Assembly (NCBI RefSeq): GCF_000150275.1
Contig: NW_002060946.1
Location: 801,562 to 865,561 of the forward strand
DNA: 64,000 bases
Direction: 5' to 3'
DNA from: Trichoplax adhaerens
Taxonomy: Eukaryota > Animalia > Placozoa
The notes beneath the pieces were generated by a model that had not been told where the DNA came from, ran no database searches, and saw only the letters and a program-made list of their open reading frames with translations. This document shows positions 24,901 through 33,993 of the stretch, one piece after another. The first letter of the stretch is position 1; the number at the start of each line of letters is the position of its first letter. The translations under genes and the position numbers were made by a program.

Positions 24901-27900
24901 TCAATGACGGACAACATTGTGGCGATTTCGATTGTTAGTAGTATACATTTCGATCAGTCGTAGGACTTCGGAATCTTCAGCATTACGCGGATCAGCTATT
25001 GAATCAGTTACAAATACACTCGTCAATTGCAATCATGTGCTAGCAATGACATTGATAATGAAGTTGTCATCAATGGGTCTAATTCATTATCGCTTTAAAG
25101 TTAATTCATTGCAGCATTAATATCAACAAATTTAGGTGTATTTATATCGACAATGTTATAATCCTACATTTGGTCTACCGGCAGAGTTAACATAGATAAG
25201 AAATTCGAATTATGGCCTAATTTAATTTCTTTGCAAGGTTATGCATTAATAATATCATTTCTTTTATCTTACTTCGACTATTAAGAGATTCATCGTTTGC
25301 AATGTTGTTACCAATAACTGATTTCGTCTTTCCTATTAACAATATAGTTATCATGAAATATCAGAGATTTAATTATTATGTATAAGCTAAATGTATCATA
25401 AAATTGTTAAATAAAACGCTCATGTTAATCATTGCATCATAGGTACCCTGCTTCTTGCGAGATGAAGGCAAAAACTTTCTAGAATCGTTAATGTTTTCCT
25501 AAAAACAAACACAATTTTATCAAACAAAAAATTAATAAAGCTAGATCAAAATACAGCACCAGTGTTATGTAGAAGAAGATCTGCTCATAACTTGAAGCCT
25601 TAATCTTAGATTTACCTCTTTTACTAGTAATTCTACCGAAGTCTTGGCCAGTCGGCTAGGTCGTAGCATCTTAACATTCCACTTAACTGCACTACCATTT
25701 GAATCGATAGCCTGTAATAGAAATAACGGTTATAAGTACAAAGGCAATTGATTTATAAGATTTCAATTTCTATCTGACGTTTACAGTATAAGTATAGAAA
25801 GAATAGGCAGCTCCATACCTGATCGATTACCTCTTCTCTACCTTTTATATCATCATCAATAGATAACTATAATATAAAGATTTTAGACGTAGCAAAACCA
25901 ATTTTATTTTAGGCTCTTTTGGTCGATTTAAAAGAAATGAAAGATTATATTACAAATCGTGGATAATTCTAGTGAACTTTAGTCCGACTCTACAGTATAA
26001 TCTAGGTGTAAAATTTATCAAAATACTTTACTTTTTCCATTTCATGATCAAGTTTCGTACTCCGCTGTCCCTGATTTATGATACGCAAAATTATATTAGT
26101 TGCATATCGATAGTGATCAATTTCAAATTTCGGTACAAAATTTTGATTTATTAATATTACAACCTCGTTTATACTAGTATCTGTTCCTTTTCCGTCAAAT
26201 TTCTAGCCCAGTTAAAAGAAAAAATAGTTTAATCGTTCCAAGAAAATTAATTATGACTACACTGATGCTAAATAAACAATGATTTAACGCATTGCAGGAA
26301 AATCGTTACGAGAAAGACGCACATTATATTTCATTTAATAACAACAGTGAACACTATGAAAAGGAATTAATCTTAATTTGCTAATATGATAAAATTTCAC
26401 TGTTTTACTTACATAAGTCAAGCGATTAAGAAGAGATAACAAATTTTTCGCATCGTTTATTTCCAAGTCAAAGGAATAAGACACAGTTTTATCTACCAAA
26501 AATGTAACTCATCTGATTAGGTAGAGTACACCACTGATAATAATTCTTGATACCTATCGTAACTTTTGCAACTGCATACAGTACCTTCTATTTCGATGCT
26601 TGTGTAAGATTTATTTCCTGAATTACGTAACTTAGTATTTACTTTAAAATTTGCCGATATCGGAATATCACCCTGTAAACCGGCGCAAAAATAAAGTTAA
26701 ATATCAAAAGATATTGGAAAGGGATGTCTATCATTGGAACCATGAGACAAATGTTAGCTATTGATCTCACCCGACAATAGTATCCACTTAATTTTTCAAC
26801 TACACCTACAAGTGCAACAGCCGTATCAAAAACCAATACGTAACGGTCGCTGGCCTATGATACAGTATTGTAAAATAATACATGTATATAGTTATCATAG
26901 AAGATTTGTAAGTCAGAAATAGAAAATAATAGAATAAATAATAGTATTGTATAGCACTGTATTTATGCTAGACCTCAGGATCATTCATTTGTGTCTTGCA
27001 CATGAACATTGGTAAGCCGTATCTACCCTTGAGCTGAGTAAAATGATGTATGCAGCATTAAAAAAATTAGAATAGTATTTCCCGAACAAGTAACCAAGCA
27101 ATTTACAAGCGATACCGTACAAGTTAATAGAAATCACCGATCAATTTAAAGTAAATAATATTATTTTATTCTATCATAGTTAAAACTTTAAACTATTATA
27201 ACCACAAATACTATGCGTGTATACTGCCATACTATGATACACATGCAGAGAGCAAAGCAACAATCACGCTAGATAATAAACTCATAGTTTACATTGCAAC
27301 CATTACAAAATTGCAATGATAAGTTATCATGCCATATTGGAGCAAAGAGATGAAGTGATAAAACAAACCATATGCTGTCCAATTTATACAGCGAAATTAT
27401 AACTTTACTGCTACTATCATTAAATTTTTGATTACCGGTATCAAAGTGATATAGCTAATTTAGAAAGAATCGTCAAATAAAGATACTATGCGAATCTCTA
27501 AAATAAGAGGTAAATCTTACAAAAAAAGTAGCTCCCTTTTATTATACATACGTTTTCATCCGGAAAGCCCTCGAGCTTCCCTGTAATAATGTCTGTTTCA
27601 ATTTCTTTATTCTTCCTTACTATAGCGCATGATTTCTGTAATTGAAGATCCATCAAGGTTATAAACTAAATTACTATTTTAAGTATGATACTATAATATA
27701 TAAATATTTTAAATAATCTAACAAAAACAATGACTATAAGGAATTACATTAATATCAGATAGCAATTCAAATGCTTCGAGTAATTTATTTCGTCCTGGAT
27801 GATGATCCTAATAATAAAGACCATTGCATTAAAAATTTATCTTGAAAACCGCTGTAATATAATCTATCAAATTAAACCTACTTCTACACTATTTAGTAGC

Positions 27901-30900
27901 TCTCTGAGTTTATTTGGGTACGCTTCTAAATGACGTAAAGGCTAAAATGGCAAGGAATGTGAATGAAAATTACAAATTTTGAAGCATTAATGATATCAAT
28001 GAATAGCATATTTTTCCTTAGTCCTTACAATGCTAATGCAAGAGGTCACATTTGAGGACGTCTCCATTTTTGGTAACTGCATCTTTTCTAATAACGCATC
28101 CAAAGCTTCCCTGTTAAGGCGAATAAGAAAATGATCAGCTGCTATAAAATTTTAATTACATAATGCTAAAGACACATTACTACGAATGACGAAGTTATAC
28201 CATACGTACTTATTCTGAATAATTGTTGAAGCTGCAACGGGATGACAACTAAAGTAACTTTTATAATTTTCCTCCAACTGTAACAATTATGTTCACTGGT
28301 TTCAATATGCGATAACATCAAGCGACTAAAATTCAATTAATTGGTAAACCTCTTTACGATTTTCCAACAAAAAACTACCAATAGATTGATCATTTTCATG
28401 GAGGCTAGATTAAAGGAACAGAAATATTTACATAGATTAAATAAGATTACGAAAACTAGTAGTATATCCAAAGTGTTAAAGAATGATCAATACTTACGCA
28501 ATATTTTTTGTCAATCTAACAATAAAGGCCTCGTGCAATATTTTAATAGAATCTAGGCTTGTATAAAGGGGTTGAAATTCCCCGGTAAAAATACTAATAT
28601 ATAAATAGTTTTATACAATATTTCCATTAGTCATATTGCATCCAGTCAATTACTCAAATACGCTAAACACTAACCTCCTTTCAGACTTTAACGGTAGTAA
28701 ACACTGCGATAAAATATTCTATAGTCCATACCAAAATTAATTTATCATATTATTTATAAAAATTTTTAATAAAATTATCAAATTTTTTACTAACAAATAG
28801 CATACCTTTAATTCCTGAACGTAAACCTTTTCATTCGAGAGCAAATCCATCACCAACGACTTGTAGTACTGCCCGACTGTCCTGCGCTTTTCTTTATGAT
28901 CTGGAAGTACTGCTATTTGCAGCATTTACGTGAATATCATATATTTATAATCAGGAATCAATAACTAGCAATTACTTAATGCATAGCTTATTCAACAGAT
29001 AGTGACGAAAGGATTATTAATTATCAATGGTAGAATAGGTTGTATTTCTTTATAGTTTGAAAATGTCCTGCTATCCAATCTAACATATACACATATAACA
29101 CTTACTAAAATGGAAAGTACATGCAATCCTATTTATATTTCGAAGTTAAAATTTATAGGATCCTTACGTTTATCACCTAGAACTGCGGATACACCAAGTT
29201 CTTCAGGTTGTTGCTTTGCTATAAAATTTAGGCTTGCAGACTAAAGAAAATAGAGTTTAAAAATCATTATTTAAGGATATATTTACTAATAGACATCATG
29301 TGATTATTGTGCCTTACTGCCGTTATACGTATGCCCGTAAAAGTATCATAATTATAGAATTAGTTATCCTTATAAGATACTAGTGACAAAGTTTACCTTT
29401 CTTCTAAGCAAGTTTTCATTAGAAGCCTAAAAAATACATCAAAAGTATTATTTAACGACACAATATGTATAATTGCTACATAAAAATAATAACAAGCAAT
29501 GAAAAGGTTTACTCGGTATTTTGACGATTCGTCTGTTATTGTATGGCTCATGGTCTATGAAGTATAAACAGTAAATNNNNNNNNNNNNNNNNNNNNNNNN
29601 NNNNNNNNNNNNNNNNNNNNNNNNNNCAATATGAGATTGTATTGATCAAGTGATCGTAACAAAACTACCATTTACGGGTGATTAATACTAACGTCGTTAA
29701 GTTTCTTTTGTAAGATTCTCAGTATCTGTTCAAAATCTTTAACATCAAGGATATATGTCTCGTAGCTTTTATTATCTGTAGCAATAACAACGTTCCCTTA
29801 GTAAATCAATACTTGCCCATACTTGTTTCTACCATAGATACTTGAGGCAAGAATCCTTTAATCAATATATTTTAGTATCCTTCTTGTGATAAAACTAAAC
29901 ATAAAGCAGTCTTACCTCTGATTTCAATAGCACATTTATAGCCATCGCTATTTTCATCAAGCTTAATCACATCATTTACTACAGTAATCCCAAGATCTGG
30001 GGTTATACTAAACGTACCCTAATGAAAGAAATAAGGTTTAAATATGTCTTATTATAAGCTATCATGGGTGTTAGTGCTTAAATCAATTTCTATTCCATGT
30101 ACGCTGGATAAAATTTATTTATAACCTCCAAACAGTATCCTTGAAATCCAGAACCCGCACTAACGAGCACAATCACTTTATCGAATATCAATAAATAGCG
30201 TTCCTTAGCCTAAAATAATATCAAAAAAAGGTAGAACAAAGAATCACAACGGTTGTATCTCCAATGGGTATTTTTTTCGCAATTAAAAAATCTTGTACGG
30301 TTACTATTAGTTAACTCTGTAGCAGAGATAGCAATGGTTGTATATGCTATATAAAAATTAGCAGAAAAGAAGTAAATTTTATAGAAAATATTAAAGTTTA
30401 CAATCTGCTTAGTTTTATTTACAGATACTCTATGTTCAATAATATATCCAGACATTAAAATGATAATAAAACGTATGGCCAACCTCGGCGGCTTTAATCC
30501 ATACAGTGCATATGTAAATTGCTTTTCCGTAGGTGTGCGCTAACTATTTTTAGTTCATATATTTAAAAGCGATTAGATAAATGACAACTAGTATTATTTA
30601 ATCAATCTATAGAGAAAGGTATAATTGCAGCTTACATATTTTCCTTCAAAACCTATCAATTTTTTAGTGACAATATCAATTTCAGTTTCTTTAGCTTTTC
30701 GCAATTTTGTACAAAGATTCTTTATCAAAGTAAAATGGTAAGTACGGTTAAGATGAAGGATGTTTTTGGGTCGATTTATTCCTTAGTAAATTGAATAATA
30801 TCAACTTACAAACAATTCGGAAAATACTACTAACGCATCCCTCAATGCTGCTTTGCATGGATGTCCATCCTATAATTAACAAGATATCAAACGTTTCAAC

Positions 30901-33900
30901 AGTGGTTTTAACATGAATTAAAATAAAAGTATTTCTCTAAGATTGCAGCAGCAATCAAAAGCAATATTAAATAAATAAATACCCTAATGTTTTCTAAGAG
31001 TCCTCCCAGTGCTTTTAGATACGCCTCAAAATGCTTCAAAGGCTATGATAAGAAAAGAACTTTTAATTATAAACGTGTCATAATACGTATTTTAACACGA
31101 ACAAATCATGCTGTTGGTAATTAGTGATATTGCTGAATAATACCATTTCTATGCAGGTAGCAAAGGTTATGCCTTGATGCGTTGGTAATCGCTTATTTTC
31201 TATAAAAGCATCTAACTTAATCCTTAATAAGAGTACAGCCCATTATTAATATAAGATCTATTAAGTAAAGTGACATGTAATGTAACAGTTTAAATGATCT
31301 GTTGGTGCTACCAACACACCTATTCCGTCGTACTAATACCGAAGCGACCGCGAAGTTGATAAAGTAAAATCGGTAAAAAGCTTCGAACTGCAAATGTTGG
31401 TAATAACATAGATTAAAAATATTCGTTAATACAAAGATATGCCAATATGATGTACTGTATAATAACTAGATTGAAAAGTAATCGAAATAATCACCTGACG
31501 CAAATAATTGAGAAAGCAGCTACCAATAGATTGCTCGTTATTGCTGCGCCTATTGCATATAGATTAAAAGAATATTGATTTTATTGCATTTATTATTGAG
31601 TTTAAATTTTATTTGAAAAACTACGCTATAATATAATTTTAATTAACTTTGGTATATAACCCAAGTCTACATTTAAAATTTAGGTCGTGATTGTTGTATT
31701 ACTGGCTTGAACAATAATACTACCGTAGTAAGAATTTCATTAGAAGACGAGTTATCGCTATCAATATATAATACTACAGTTCAAACTTCTATCTCGGTGT
31801 ATATTACCGTAGTAAAATTTTATATGAATACATAACATTTTGCCACTTGAATTAATGAAACTCACGCTGTTTCATCCTTCAATCTTTTCAAAAATCCCTC
31901 ATGTATTTTAATTAATGATTCAAATTTACCGCAAACGGTTTCAGAATCACCAACCGGTAGCCTACAGTAGTTAGTACATCGACACCAATTAATTTAGAAT
32001 AACCATTTGTATTTATTATAGATATATACGATATTATTGATACGTTAACTTACACTTCTTCTTTTTTAAAAGGTATAAAATAATACTGGTAAATGTCCTG
32101 TTGAAAAAACGTACAATAAATACATATACATATATATATATAATAATAATACAATAAAGGTTTACAAAATTACATAGCAAATTAACCTTAACTAATCACT
32201 AACGGCGTCATCACTGGATTACGACGCTCTAATACTTAATGTCAAAAAATTACCCGTAATTTTTCAATAAATTCCTCTTCTTGTTTTACGATATCTCGGA
32301 CAACAATACCATAATATTGGCCAGAAGTATTTTGTCTGGGCAATGTAGACGATCTGACGTTACTCACTTGATTGAAATCAGAAAAGGAAATTATCTATGG
32401 TGAGCTATCATTAAATGGATGCTTGATCTATTAATTATGGAGCCAAATCCAATAAAACTGATATTACCAGAATAACTACTTGATATCTATTGTATTGTTC
32501 TATACAAGCGTAAAAATATGCATTTTAACAATTTCCTCTACTCATAAGTAAATTTAGATACGAAAATCAGTGTACTAGTAACAAAGGTATAATGCTGTCA
32601 ATTTATGTATGACAGATGTCATCTTTTAATTGTTTCAACATAAACTCTTTCCAAACGTAGTAAAGACGTATATTAATAAAACTGGAAAAAGCCATAATTC
32701 AACATTTACTGTGCTGATTGAGAAATACGTTAGCAAAAAAAGATTAAACTTAAACAGTTTACGATTTTAAATCTAGTACATTTTATTTACCAAATAGCAA
32801 TTAGCATTACCTTTAACCTCAGTAACATGATTAGCTGGAAACCATCCATAGCCATCCTTATCACGTAATTTACCCTTCCACCAATCTCTATCAGGTTGCT
32901 AGAAATATCAATATTGTTATATGAAAAGATGTAATTTTATTGTTTATCAAAATATAGAGCTACTAATTTCGACAGTAAGGTAATCACATTAATTATGCTA
33001 CACACGTACACGGGTTCCCATTAATTCATAGTACCGTACAATAGGTAGTATACACTAATTAAATTAAAATCTTTATAGTTATTAAAGGAATGTCGCAAAA
33101 TTATCTTAATCAAAAAAGGCCATCAAATTAAACGAAAATTTCACGAGTCTGTTATATCAAATTAAGTAATAAATGTAATTTATGGATTTGAATTATTATT
33201 TTCTACGTTAACTAAATCACAGTCTTACCTCTATAATTTCAATATAATCTCCCTTCTTAAAGGATAACTAAAACATGAAAGAGAATTATCACATGTAACC
33301 TAATTAACCGTTTATATCATCTACCATCTGGTATCTTCTTCTATTCTAGTACTATGGTCAATGCATTGAATGTTTACAGCGAATAAAGAAGATATTTCAA
33401 AATTCAGATTATCGCAGCACAGAGTGGACTACACCTTTCTTTCTTAATTATACGTGCATAAATAGATGTAATATTACTAGCTTGCGAATCGGTGGGATCA
33501 AAAACCAAAATAGTTCATTACTAGGCAAAATTGCCTGTACTTATTATTATCTTCAAGTTAAAAATTATTACTGTAATAACTATAATATGAAGGCTAAAGA
33601 AAGGCAAATGCAATCATTTCAATATCAGCCTGCCATTTCTTGTCATGTTGATATCAGCATCATCTTATTTAAGAAGCCAATCTTTGAATAGTATCAAACA
33701 AATCTTACATATCTTCGACTTTCTCTCTAATACAATACAGTGCTGTAGAATCAATGCTATTGTAATCTACAGTATACTAGTATGACAAATGTAAGCATTT
33801 GTTGAATTATGATGTTGTATCTACTCGTAGTGATCAACTTTAATATAACATCTAAAAGGAAGCATGAAAAATTGTTGTACACCTTTTACGTTCTATGCGT

Positions 33901-33993
33901 TCGATTAGAACTTACATCACTATTGCTATCAGCACTGTAATCATGTTTCGCTTTAACCAAGCGGCGTTTTCCTTCTTTTTCAATTGATTTCAT
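24901..33993 (-). CDS. ARHGEF7: beta-PIX/alpha-PIX (ARHGEF7/ARHGEF6)-like Rho GEF with architecture SH3-DH-PH-DH-PH-GIT-binding motif
   Basis: The ATG at 33993 begins MKSIEKEGKRRLVKAKHDY. SH3 exons read LSFKKGDYIEIIE and DWWKGKLRDKDGYGWFPANHV. The DH domain starts GQYYGIVVRDIVKQEEEF and ends with the PIX-type CTKLRKAKETEIDI, followed by PH KERYLLIFD. A second DH-PH follows. The C-terminal region has WNVKMLRP and AEDSEVLRLIEMY (compare the PIX GBD EEDAQILKVIEAY). The stop TGA is at 24901-24903. Confidence 0.85.
29577..29626. other. Assembly gap (50 N) inside an intron of the PIX-like gene
   Basis: Run of 50 n characters. Confidence 1.

What the first reader, a model, noticed from the sequence alone, without database searches (positions are those of the whole stretch)
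26414..32394. PIX-family GEF with an internally duplicated DH-PH module
Seen: two successive DH-PH units match exon for exon. Examples are GQYYGIVVRDIV vs GQYYKSLVMDLL, SLIKIHEGFLKRL vs SIKILHEAFIVRL, NEQSIGS vs NDQSIGS, PLKHFEAY vs PLRHLEAY, GHPCK vs HHPGR, CTKLRKAKETEIDI vs CAIVRKNKEIETDI and KERYLLIFD vs SDRYVLVFD. Unit 1 spans about 29693-32394 and unit 2 about 26414-28909. The linker exons (42, 30 and 73 nt) keep the frame without stops, there is only one SH3, and only unit 2 is followed by the GBD. Known: characterised alpha/beta-PIX proteins have one DH-PH, whereas two-GEF-module proteins are typical of the Trio/Kalirin family. Inference: an old intragenic duplication produced a two-GEF PIX, possibly with two GTPase specificities or one regulatory copy.
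Basis: partly seen in the sequence, partly recalled or inferred. Interest (0 to 1): 0.8.

Follow-up and report, generated by a model that had tools for sequence, protein, structure and literature searches.

The report
Placozoan PIX gene with two DH-PH modules
This Trichoplax gene encodes a PIX-type activator of Rho-family GTPases whose catalytic DH-PH unit was duplicated in tandem long ago, and both copies are kept by selection; it is already in public gene catalogues, but I found no paper describing the doubled architecture.

Summary
On the minus strand, two blocks of 13 exons (32366-29693 and 28912-26413) match exon for exon. All 12 intron phases agree and 10 of 12 comparable exon lengths are identical. 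The proteins are 31% identical over 317 residues (177 bits).

The N gap is not a mis-join. The gap-free Trichoplax sp. H2 locus is 99.3-99.7% identical on both sides. It shows the gap is about 138 nt and hides a fourth, 48-nt linker exon that keeps the frame.

A 3-kb metagenome scaffold from a more distant placozoan-like animal carries the same junction. All four linker exons have intact splice sites and one open frame, and the linker has no Met. dN/dS is about 0.17 (unit 1), 0.16 (unit 2) and 0.30 (linker).

Public models already join everything into one gene: T. adhaerens XP_002111812.1 (incomplete) and the evidence-based H2 model named 'Rho guanine nucleotide exchange factor 7' (927 aa).

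PIX affinity is supported by the N-terminal SH3, a best solved-structure match of DH1 to the betaPIX DH domain, ARHGEF7 as nearest structural neighbour of both modules, and a C-terminal GIT-binding-like motif. No PIX coiled coil was found.

Verdict: one gene, SH3-DH-PH-linker-DH-PH-GBD, produced by an ancient tandem block duplication. Direct transcript proof and the activity of each module remain untested.

The parts
32811..33993 (-). Start codon and three SH3 exons (33993-33916, 33267-33229, 32898-32811)
   Evidence: Exact lift of the H2 model exons, ag/gt borders. Pfam SH3_1 E 2e-14 at residues 14-61. PDB hits include ARHGEF7 and ARHGEF6 SH3 domains.
30636..32366 (-). DH1: unit-1 exons 1-9 (32366-32254, 32097-32054, 31961-31866, 31549-31495, 31387-31320, 31222-31144, 31042-30983, 30869-30810, 30719-30636)
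   Evidence: All borders AG/GT. Pfam RhoGEF at residues 90-260. Best PDB match is the betaPIX DH domain 1by1, E 8e-19.
29693..30543 (-). PH-like 1: unit-1 exons 10-13 (30543-30484, 30209-30126, 30018-29916, 29775-29693)
   Evidence: AG/GT borders. PDB alignments to ARHGEF4 and ARHGEF9 run from the DH into this region. Atlas structural alignment to ARHGEF7 covers residues 84-400, TM 0.84. No Pfam PH hit.
29577..29626 (.). Assembly gap, really about 138 nt, hiding the 48-nt linker exon Lk-0
   Evidence: H2 locus L002 7369-7506 fills the gap. The exon lies at L002 7393-7440 with ag/gt borders. The same exon is at L001 1522-1569.
29513..29554 (-). Linker exon Lk-1 (42 nt)
   Evidence: ag/gt, phase 0. 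Present in H2 model P0006. Conserved at L001 1658-1699 without the Met.
29397..29426 (-). Linker exon Lk-2 (30 nt)
   Evidence: ag/gt. Present in P0001 and P0006. Found at L001 1815-1844.
29168..29240 (-). Linker exon Lk-3 (73 nt, ends in phase 1)
   Evidence: ag/gt. Found at L001 2060-2132 with 81% nucleotide identity.
27552..28912 (-). DH2: unit-2 exons 1-9 (28912-28806, 28718-28675, 28593-28498, 28404-28350, 28277-28210, 28110-28029, 27941-27882, 27807-27748, 27635-27552)
   Evidence: AG/GT borders. It is the second Pfam RhoGEF stretch and passes E 1e-6 on its own. Atlas structural neighbours are ARHGEF7 clusters, TM 0.79.
26413..27033 (-). PH-like 2: unit-2 exons 10-13 (27033-26974, 26854-26771, 26672-26585, 26492-26413)
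   Evidence: AG/GT borders. Aligns to PH-like 1 exon for exon. Atlas structural alignment covers residues 470-790. No Pfam PH hit.
24901..26202 (-). C-terminal exons (26202-26164, 26070-26032, 25866-25819, 25711-25616, 25498-25447, 25332-25273, 24995-24901 including the stop), with the GIT-binding-like motif in the last exon
   Evidence: Lift of the H2 model. The last exon's only PDB match is the betaPIX GBD peptide 6jmt_I. Weak PF16614 match, E 0.24, at residues 837-919.

Best explanation
This is a single 40-exon gene on the minus strand, about 33993-24901. It corresponds to Trichoplax adhaerens TRIADDRAFT_55213. It encodes a roughly 927-residue PIX-type Dbl-family RhoGEF with the layout SH3 - DH1 - PH-like1 - 64-residue linker - DH2 - PH-like2 - short tail ending in a GIT-binding-like motif.

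The doubled part arose by an ancient tandem duplication of a genomic block of 13 exons. Together with the four small linker exons, the repeat length is a multiple of three, so the frame is kept. The duplication predates the split between Trichoplax and the more distant placozoan-like animal represented by scaffold L001. Both copies have been under similar purifying selection since then.

Inferred mechanism, not shown here: the SH3 recruits a PAK-like kinase, the C-terminal motif docks onto the Spa2-homology repeats of the GIT orthologue present in this genome, and two PIX-type DH-PH modules act in cis on Rac/Cdc42-type GTPases. Whether both catalyse exchange, or on which GTPases, is not known.
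For: Exon-for-exon match with identical phases. Units are 31% identical over 317 aa, 177 bits. Pfam RhoGEF is found twice, each stretch at E <= 1e-6.

The gap is bridged by the H2 locus at 99.3-99.7% identity, revealing an in-frame 48-nt exon.

All 39 readable exons are intact in the window, with only 3 amino-acid differences from the H2 protein.

Scaffold L001 carries unit-1 exons 7-13, four linker exons and unit-2 exons 1-5 in one piece. All have ag/gt borders, exon lengths are the same apart from 3 nt, and 357 codons are open.

dN/dS is 0.17, 0.16 and 0.30 for unit 1, unit 2 and the linker, and the L001 linker has no Met.

The linker frame fits only unit-1 exon 13 upstream (phase 0) and unit-2 exon 1 downstream (phase 1).

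Both public models join the units. The H2 annotation used Maker with transcript evidence (PMC6057997).

PIX affinity:
- DH1's best PDB hit is the betaPIX DH domain 1by1.
- Both modules have ARHGEF7 clusters as nearest structural neighbours, TM 0.84 and 0.79, against 0.60-0.65 for ARHGEF9 and Vav.
- The last exon's only PDB hit is the betaPIX GBD peptide.
- GIT_SHD repeats are present in the genome.
Against: - No transcript or junction read was inspected. Both public models are pipeline predictions, and the T. adhaerens one is visibly faulty: it skips two exons and ends inside an intron.
- In Trichoplax, an ATG at 29671-29669 directly follows the in-frame stop after unit-1 exon 13 and reads in frame into the hidden linker exon. 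A separate downstream product is therefore conceivable there.
- Neither PH-like region hits Pfam PH.
- The GBD match is not significant on its own (E 1.7).
- No PIX coiled coil was found.
- The Atlas neighbours are leads without statistics.
- DH2 could not be searched alone by sequence.
Confidence: 0.82

Rival explanations
1. Two neighbouring genes fused by gene predictors: an upstream SH3-DH-PH gene ending at the TAA at 29674-29672, and a downstream DH-PH-GBD gene starting in or near the linker.
For: If the donor at 29692 is not used, the frame stops 7 codons later. An ATG follows immediately and is in frame with the next linker exon in Trichoplax. Further ATGs exist in Lk-1 and at 28925. No transcript was inspected.
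Against: None of these ATGs is conserved in L001. There, a TAG directly precedes Lk-0 in frame, Lk-1 reads SLSH in place of TMSH, and the whole linker lacks Met. Yet the linker exons keep their splice sites, frame and protein sequence (dN/dS 0.30). The intron available for a promoter is only 90 nt. The donor of unit-1 exon 13 sits at the position homologous to the donor of unit-2 exon 13, and is kept in L001. The H2 model, built with transcript evidence, contains micro-exons of 30-48 nt that ab initio prediction rarely finds (the last point is inference).
Confidence: 0.07
2. One gene, but the two blocks are used mainly as alternative cassettes. Splicing SH3 exon 3 directly to unit-2 exon 1, or unit-1 exon 13 directly to the first C-terminal exon, would give ordinary single-module PIX isoforms with different DH-PH units. 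The double-module protein would be one isoform among several.
For: Both skips keep the frame. Unit 1 plus linker is 1182 nt and linker plus unit 2 is 1161 nt, both multiples of three, and the phases match. Only one isoform per species is in the databases, so alternatives were never tested.
Against: The linker exons are conserved as coding sequence in the only frame that requires unit 1 before them and unit 2 after them. The full-length form must therefore be made and matter. No isoform evidence of any kind was found.
Confidence: 0.15
3. Assembly artefact: a mis-join, or a collapsed or duplicated haplotype at the N gap, created an apparent tandem repeat.
For: The gap lies exactly between the two units, and its stated length (50) is wrong.
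Against: The units are only 31% identical in protein, far too diverged for haplotypes. Two independent gap-free assemblies show the same order: H2 and a distant relative.
Confidence: 0.01

Closest known systems
PIX / Cool family (ARHGEF7 betaPIX, ARHGEF6 alphaPIX; fly dPix; worm PIX-1)
   Same: - N-terminal SH3 directly before a DH-PH unit.
- DH1's best solved-structure match is the betaPIX DH domain.
- Both modules have ARHGEF7 as nearest structural neighbour.
- A C-terminal motif aligns to the betaPIX GIT-binding peptide.
- A GIT orthologue with SHD repeats exists in the genome.
- The H2 protein is named ARHGEF7 by its annotators.
   Different: - Two DH-PH units instead of one.
- No C-terminal coiled coil or PDZ-binding tail was detected; the protein ends about 10 residues after the GBD-like motif.
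- No CH domain.
- The PH-like regions do not hit Pfam PH. Reading the sequence, I see no tryptophan in the last helix of either.
Trio / Kalirin / UNC-73
   Same: Two DH-PH modules in one polypeptide. According to Fort and Blangy 2017 (PMC5499878), these are the only human Dbl proteins with two DH domains.
   Different: Here the two modules are each other's duplicates, with the same intron positions and 31% identity. No Sec14, spectrin repeats or kinase domain is present (Pfam). The architecture therefore arose independently.
Asef (ARHGEF4) and collybistin (ARHGEF9)
   Same: SH3-DH-PH order. They are the second- and third-best groups of PDB matches across SH3, DH and the start of PH.
   Different: They score lower than betaPIX on the DH, are structurally further (TM 0.60-0.65 against 0.79-0.84), and have no GIT-binding motif. 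A separate SH3-plus-DH locus exists on another contig (C1410, about 1.861-1.863 Mb).

Membership tests
PIX (ARHGEF6/7) | SH3 domain immediately N-terminal to the DH domain | tested here: met
   Pfam SH3_1 E 2e-14 at residues 14-61, with DH starting at about residue 84. ARHGEF7 and ARHGEF6 SH3 structures are among the hits.
PIX (ARHGEF6/7) | DH domain of PIX type (first module) | tested here: met
   The best of 177,635 PDB sequences is the betaPIX DH domain 1by1, E 8e-19, gap-free over 195 residues. Atlas structural neighbours are ARHGEF7 clusters, TM 0.84.
PIX (ARHGEF6/7) | DH domain of PIX type (second module) | tested here: inconclusive
   Pfam RhoGEF is significant on its own. Intron positions are the same as in module 1. 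The nearest Atlas structures are ARHGEF7 clusters, TM 0.79. By hand count from the printed alignments, identity to betaPIX DH is about 26%, against about 24% for DH1. No DH2-only sequence search or phylogeny was possible.
PIX (ARHGEF6/7) | PH domain following the DH | tested here: inconclusive
   No Pfam PH hit at E <= 1. Structural alignments to ARHGEF7 models span about 305-309 residues, covering DH plus PH, in both modules. My own AlphaFold model was too poor to use.
PIX (ARHGEF6/7) | GIT-binding domain C-terminal to the PH | tested here: inconclusive
   The last exon's only PDB match is the betaPIX GBD peptide of 6jmt, 9 of 17 identical, E 1.7. PF16614 scores E 0.24, below its cut-off. GIT_SHD repeats are present in the genome.
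PIX (ARHGEF6/7) | C-terminal coiled coil (betaPIX_CC) for oligomerisation | tested here: not met
   PF16523 has no match at this locus and nothing above cut-off in the genome. The H2 model stops shortly after the GBD-like motif. A six-frame, exon-wise search is insensitive, so a diverged coiled coil is not excluded.
PIX (ARHGEF6/7) | A single DH-PH unit | tested here: not met
   Two units are present.
Trio/Kalirin | Sec14 and spectrin repeats before two DH-PH modules of different subfamilies | tested here: not met
   Pfam finds only SH3 and RhoGEF. The two modules are mutual duplicates.

The most novel reading that the evidence does not exclude
Placozoans built a dual-GEF PIX independently of Trio/Kalirin. 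The two conserved modules may have diverged in GTPase specificity, for example Rac against Cdc42. Alternatively, two modules in cis may replace the multivalency that bilaterian PIX gets from its coiled-coil trimer in GIT-PIX assemblies, since no coiled coil is detectable here.
Probability: 0.25. Interest if true: 0.6.

Novelty: new variant of a known kind. Interest (0 to 1): 0.42.

Why it matters
Proteins with two Dbl-type exchange modules are rare. Among human Dbl proteins only Trio and Kalirin have them (PMC5499878). A second, independent origin inside the PIX family would be a natural experiment on how GEF modules are duplicated and divide their work. It has been conserved under selection in diverged placozoans, which have few cell types and a small Rho toolkit.

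The finding also has practical value. The T. adhaerens reference model XP_002111812.1 is wrong in four places, and the reference assembly hides one coding exon in a gap.

The gain is moderate. The gene and its two DH domains are already in public databases, and domain duplication is an ordinary evolutionary event.

Tried and rejected
- **Exon-wise Pfam scan of unit 1 by reference:** exons are too short and nothing useful came out.
- **Six-frame RhoGEF search of the genome:** it did not pick up this locus at all, because the DH is split into nine small exons.
- **Word-based protein search, whole protein and DH1-PH1 region:** it found only the two Trichoplax proteins. I could therefore fetch no PIX sequences from cnidarians, sponges or bilaterians, and no DH phylogeny was built. 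The third search was not spent, because the same failure was expected.
- **AlphaFold2 on the H2 protein without an alignment:** mean pLDDT was 36, so it was not used for fold search. Only its helix/strand order agrees with SH3, DH-PH, coil, DH-PH.
- **Linker against the post-PH2 tail:** no similarity (score below the shuffle mean), so the origin of the linker exons is unresolved.
- **Literature:** no paper in the held library mentions TRIADDRAFT_55213, B3RUA4 or a two-module PIX. The supplements of Fort and Blangy 2017 are not held.
- **Earlier notes of this scan:** nothing.
- I redid the work from coordinates only.
- **Joined model:** my own joined exon model was never sent to a search tool. 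Searches used single exons by reference or the public proteins P0001 and P0006. Joined translations were made only inside scripts, from coordinates, to check frames.
- **Human sequence:** the contig is not human.
Full report
**What the window is.** The assembly has 105.6 Mb in 1414 contigs. The window is AT-rich with introns of about 70-500 nt. A profile built from one exon pair of the finding retrieved an 811-residue protein, P0001. It is XP_002111812.1 / TRIADDRAFT_55213 / UniProt B3RUA4 of Trichoplax adhaerens. The gene lies on the minus strand. The contig is not human.

**Checking the observation.** I read the region in three frames and fixed exon borders by coordinates.
- All 29 exons of unit 1, the visible linker and unit 2 have AG acceptors and GT donors. 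They form one open frame.
- The two units have 13 exons each. After the first exon, lengths are 44/96/55/68/79/60/60/84/60/84/103/83 and 44/96/55/68/82/60/60/84/60/84/88/80. Intron phases are identical.
- Every exon pair aligns, at 5-13 identities each.
- As proteins, the units are 31% identical over 317 residues with two gaps, 177 bits.

This is far beyond chance. It means a genomic block of 13 exons was duplicated in tandem.

- Unit 1's first exon starts at 32366.
- Unit 2's first exon starts at 28912.
- Unit 2 ends at 26413.

**The gap.** The word search with P0001 found a 927-residue protein of Trichoplax sp. H2, P0006, named 'Rho guanine nucleotide exchange factor 7'. Its genomic locus L002 has no N.
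- L002 aligns to window 36987-29627 at 99.3% and to 29576-21907 at 99.7%.
- The 50 N therefore stand for 138 nt.
- Inside them lies a 48-nt exon with ag/gt borders, encoding 16 residues in frame.
- The linker thus has four exons (48, 42, 30 and 73 nt), and the gap is not a mis-join.
- Lifting the 40-exon H2 model onto the window gives 39 intact exons, 6 nucleotide and 3 amino-acid differences, and a stop at 24903-24901.

**An independent, more distant witness.** The same profile search returned a 74-residue open frame, P0004, on a 3091-bp ENA metagenome scaffold, L001.
- L001 is collinear with the window from unit-1 exon 7 to unit-2 exon 5, including all four linker exons.
- All 16 exons have ag/gt borders.
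- Exon lengths equal those of H2, except that unit-2 exon 1 is 3 nt shorter.
- The 357 codons are open.
- Against H2, amino-acid identity is 61% (unit 1), 60% (unit 2) and 62.5% (linker).
- Nei-Gojobori dN/dS is about 0.17, 0.16 and 0.30. Synonymous sites in the DH/PH exons are near saturation.

The duplication is therefore much older than the split of these two lineages, both copies are equally constrained, and the linker is coding sequence.

**One gene or two.** Read through the donor at 29692, the frame of unit-1 exon 13 stops after seven codons (TAA at 29674-29672). In Trichoplax an ATG follows at once (29671-29669) and is in frame with the hidden linker exon. Further ATGs lie in the 42-nt exon and at 28925. 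A two-gene reading is therefore not absurd. Against it:
- None of these ATGs is conserved in L001. There the intron carries stops, with a TAG directly before the 48-nt exon, and the linker has no Met at all.
- The linker exons are nevertheless kept as coding sequence.
- Their frame is reachable only from unit-1 exon 13 (phase 0) and leads only into unit-2 exon 1 (phase 1).
- The donor after unit-1 exon 13 sits at the position homologous to the donor after unit-2 exon 13.
- Both public models join the units.
- The H2 annotation was made with Maker using de novo and genome-guided transcript assemblies (PMC6057997). It contains micro-exons of 30-48 nt. That this particular model rests on transcripts is my inference.

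I put the single-gene reading at about 0.8-0.85.

A variant cannot be excluded. Unit 1 plus linker is 1182 nt and linker plus unit 2 is 1161 nt, so skipping either block keeps the frame. That would yield ordinary single-module isoforms.

**What kind of GEF.**
- Pfam finds one SH3 (E 2e-14) and two RhoGEF stretches, each significant on its own at 1e-6.
- Pfam finds no PH, Sec14, spectrin or kinase domain.
- Against all PDB sequences, the best match is the betaPIX DH domain 1by1 (E 8e-19, gap-free over 195 residues). Asef, intersectin and collybistin follow.
- That search cannot report DH2 separately, because DH1 and DH2 compete for the same target segment.
- By hand count from the printed alignments, betaPIX DH is about 24% identical to DH1 and about 26% to DH2.
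- In the ESM Atlas, the stored model of this protein has ARHGEF7 clusters as nearest structural neighbours for both modules: TM 0.84 over 305 residues and 0.79 over 309 residues. Arthropod and nematode SH3-RhoGEF clusters come next, and collybistin and Vav score 0.60-0.65. These are leads, not tests.
- The last exon's only PDB match is the 21-residue betaPIX peptide bound to GIT in 6jmt (9 of 17 identical, E 1.7). PF16614 matches the tail weakly (E 0.24).
- The genome encodes two GIT_SHD repeats on another contig.
- It gives no betaPIX coiled-coil match.
- In the genome-wide search with P0006, all matches outside this locus fell in residues 4-94 of the query, essentially the SH3 domain. No DH or PH exon matched elsewhere, so there is no close PIX paralogue, within the low sensitivity of exon-wise search.

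**Mechanism.**
- Shown: the architecture, its origin by block duplication, its age relative to two placozoan lineages, and equal constraint on both modules.
- Inferred from knowledge of PIX proteins: SH3 to PAK, C-terminal motif to GIT, and DH-PH acting on Rac/Cdc42.
- In the first DH helix, both modules carry an acidic residue and a Glu at the positions that I recall as the conserved motif of Dbl domains. Both have Lys/Arg-His where canonical domains have Gln-Arg. Neither module therefore looks more degenerate than the other (read by eye).
- Whether both are active, and on what, is open.

**Novelty.** The gene and its two DH domains are in NCBI and UniProt, and the H2 protein is already named ARHGEF7. 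I found no paper in the held library that mentions the locus or a two-module PIX. Fort and Blangy state that Trio and Kalirin are the only human Dbl proteins with two DH domains, and they counted 22 Dbl members in Placozoa. I rate this a new variant of a known kind, of moderate interest.

**Limits.** No transcript data could be reached. No PIX sequences from other phyla could be fetched, so there is no phylogeny and no survey of other phyla. My AlphaFold model was unusable. My own joined exon model was not sent to any search tool. Exons were searched by reference, and the public proteins were used instead.

Noticed in passing
window 24901-33993 (-), compared with P0001: The reference T. adhaerens model XP_002111812.1 is faulty. 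It lacks the 48-nt exon (in the gap), the 42-nt linker exon (29554-29513) and unit-2 exon 3 (28593-28498, part of DH2). It also reads on into the intron after the exon at 25498-25447, so it misses the last two exons with the GIT-binding-like motif.
   Followed up: yes
window 29669-29674 (-): In Trichoplax, the in-frame stop after unit-1 exon 13 is followed at once by an ATG. That ATG opens a 23-codon frame running straight into the hidden 48-nt exon. It is not conserved in L001, where stops fill the intron.
   Followed up: partly
window 29168-29240 (-); L001 2060-2132: The 73-nt linker exon is unusually conserved at the nucleotide level: 81% identity, with a synonymous difference of 0.22 against about 0.64 in the DH/PH exons. 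This might reflect splicing signals or another constraint on the RNA.
   Followed up: no
window 26413-27033 and 29693-30543 (-): Neither PH-like region hits Pfam PH. Read directly from the sequence, neither has a tryptophan in its last helix, and unit 2's region has no tryptophan at all.
   Followed up: partly
window from about 35434 upward (+), by lift from L002 1-1554: The upstream neighbour, in divergent orientation, is an 844-residue ArfGap-domain gene in the H2 annotation. It is not the GIT orthologue, whose SHD repeats lie on contig C1414.
   Followed up: no
window about 22281 downward (-), by lift from L002 14802-15184: The downstream neighbour on the same strand is an EMP70 (TM9SF-type) gene in the H2 annotation.
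   Followed up: no
window 26975-27551 (-): The intron between unit-2 exons 9 and 10 is 518 nt, against 92 nt at the same position in unit 1. It is the longest intron in the duplicated part. Its content was not examined.
   Followed up: no
L001 (ENA ERZ23499115, scaffold_10188): A metagenome assembly contains DNA of an unidentified placozoan-like animal, about 60% identical in protein to Trichoplax at this gene. The species was not determined.
   Followed up: no
G000:C1410 about 1861366-1862628 (-): A separate locus has an SH3 next to RhoGEF exons. It may be the Asef/collybistin-type gene of Trichoplax.
   Followed up: no
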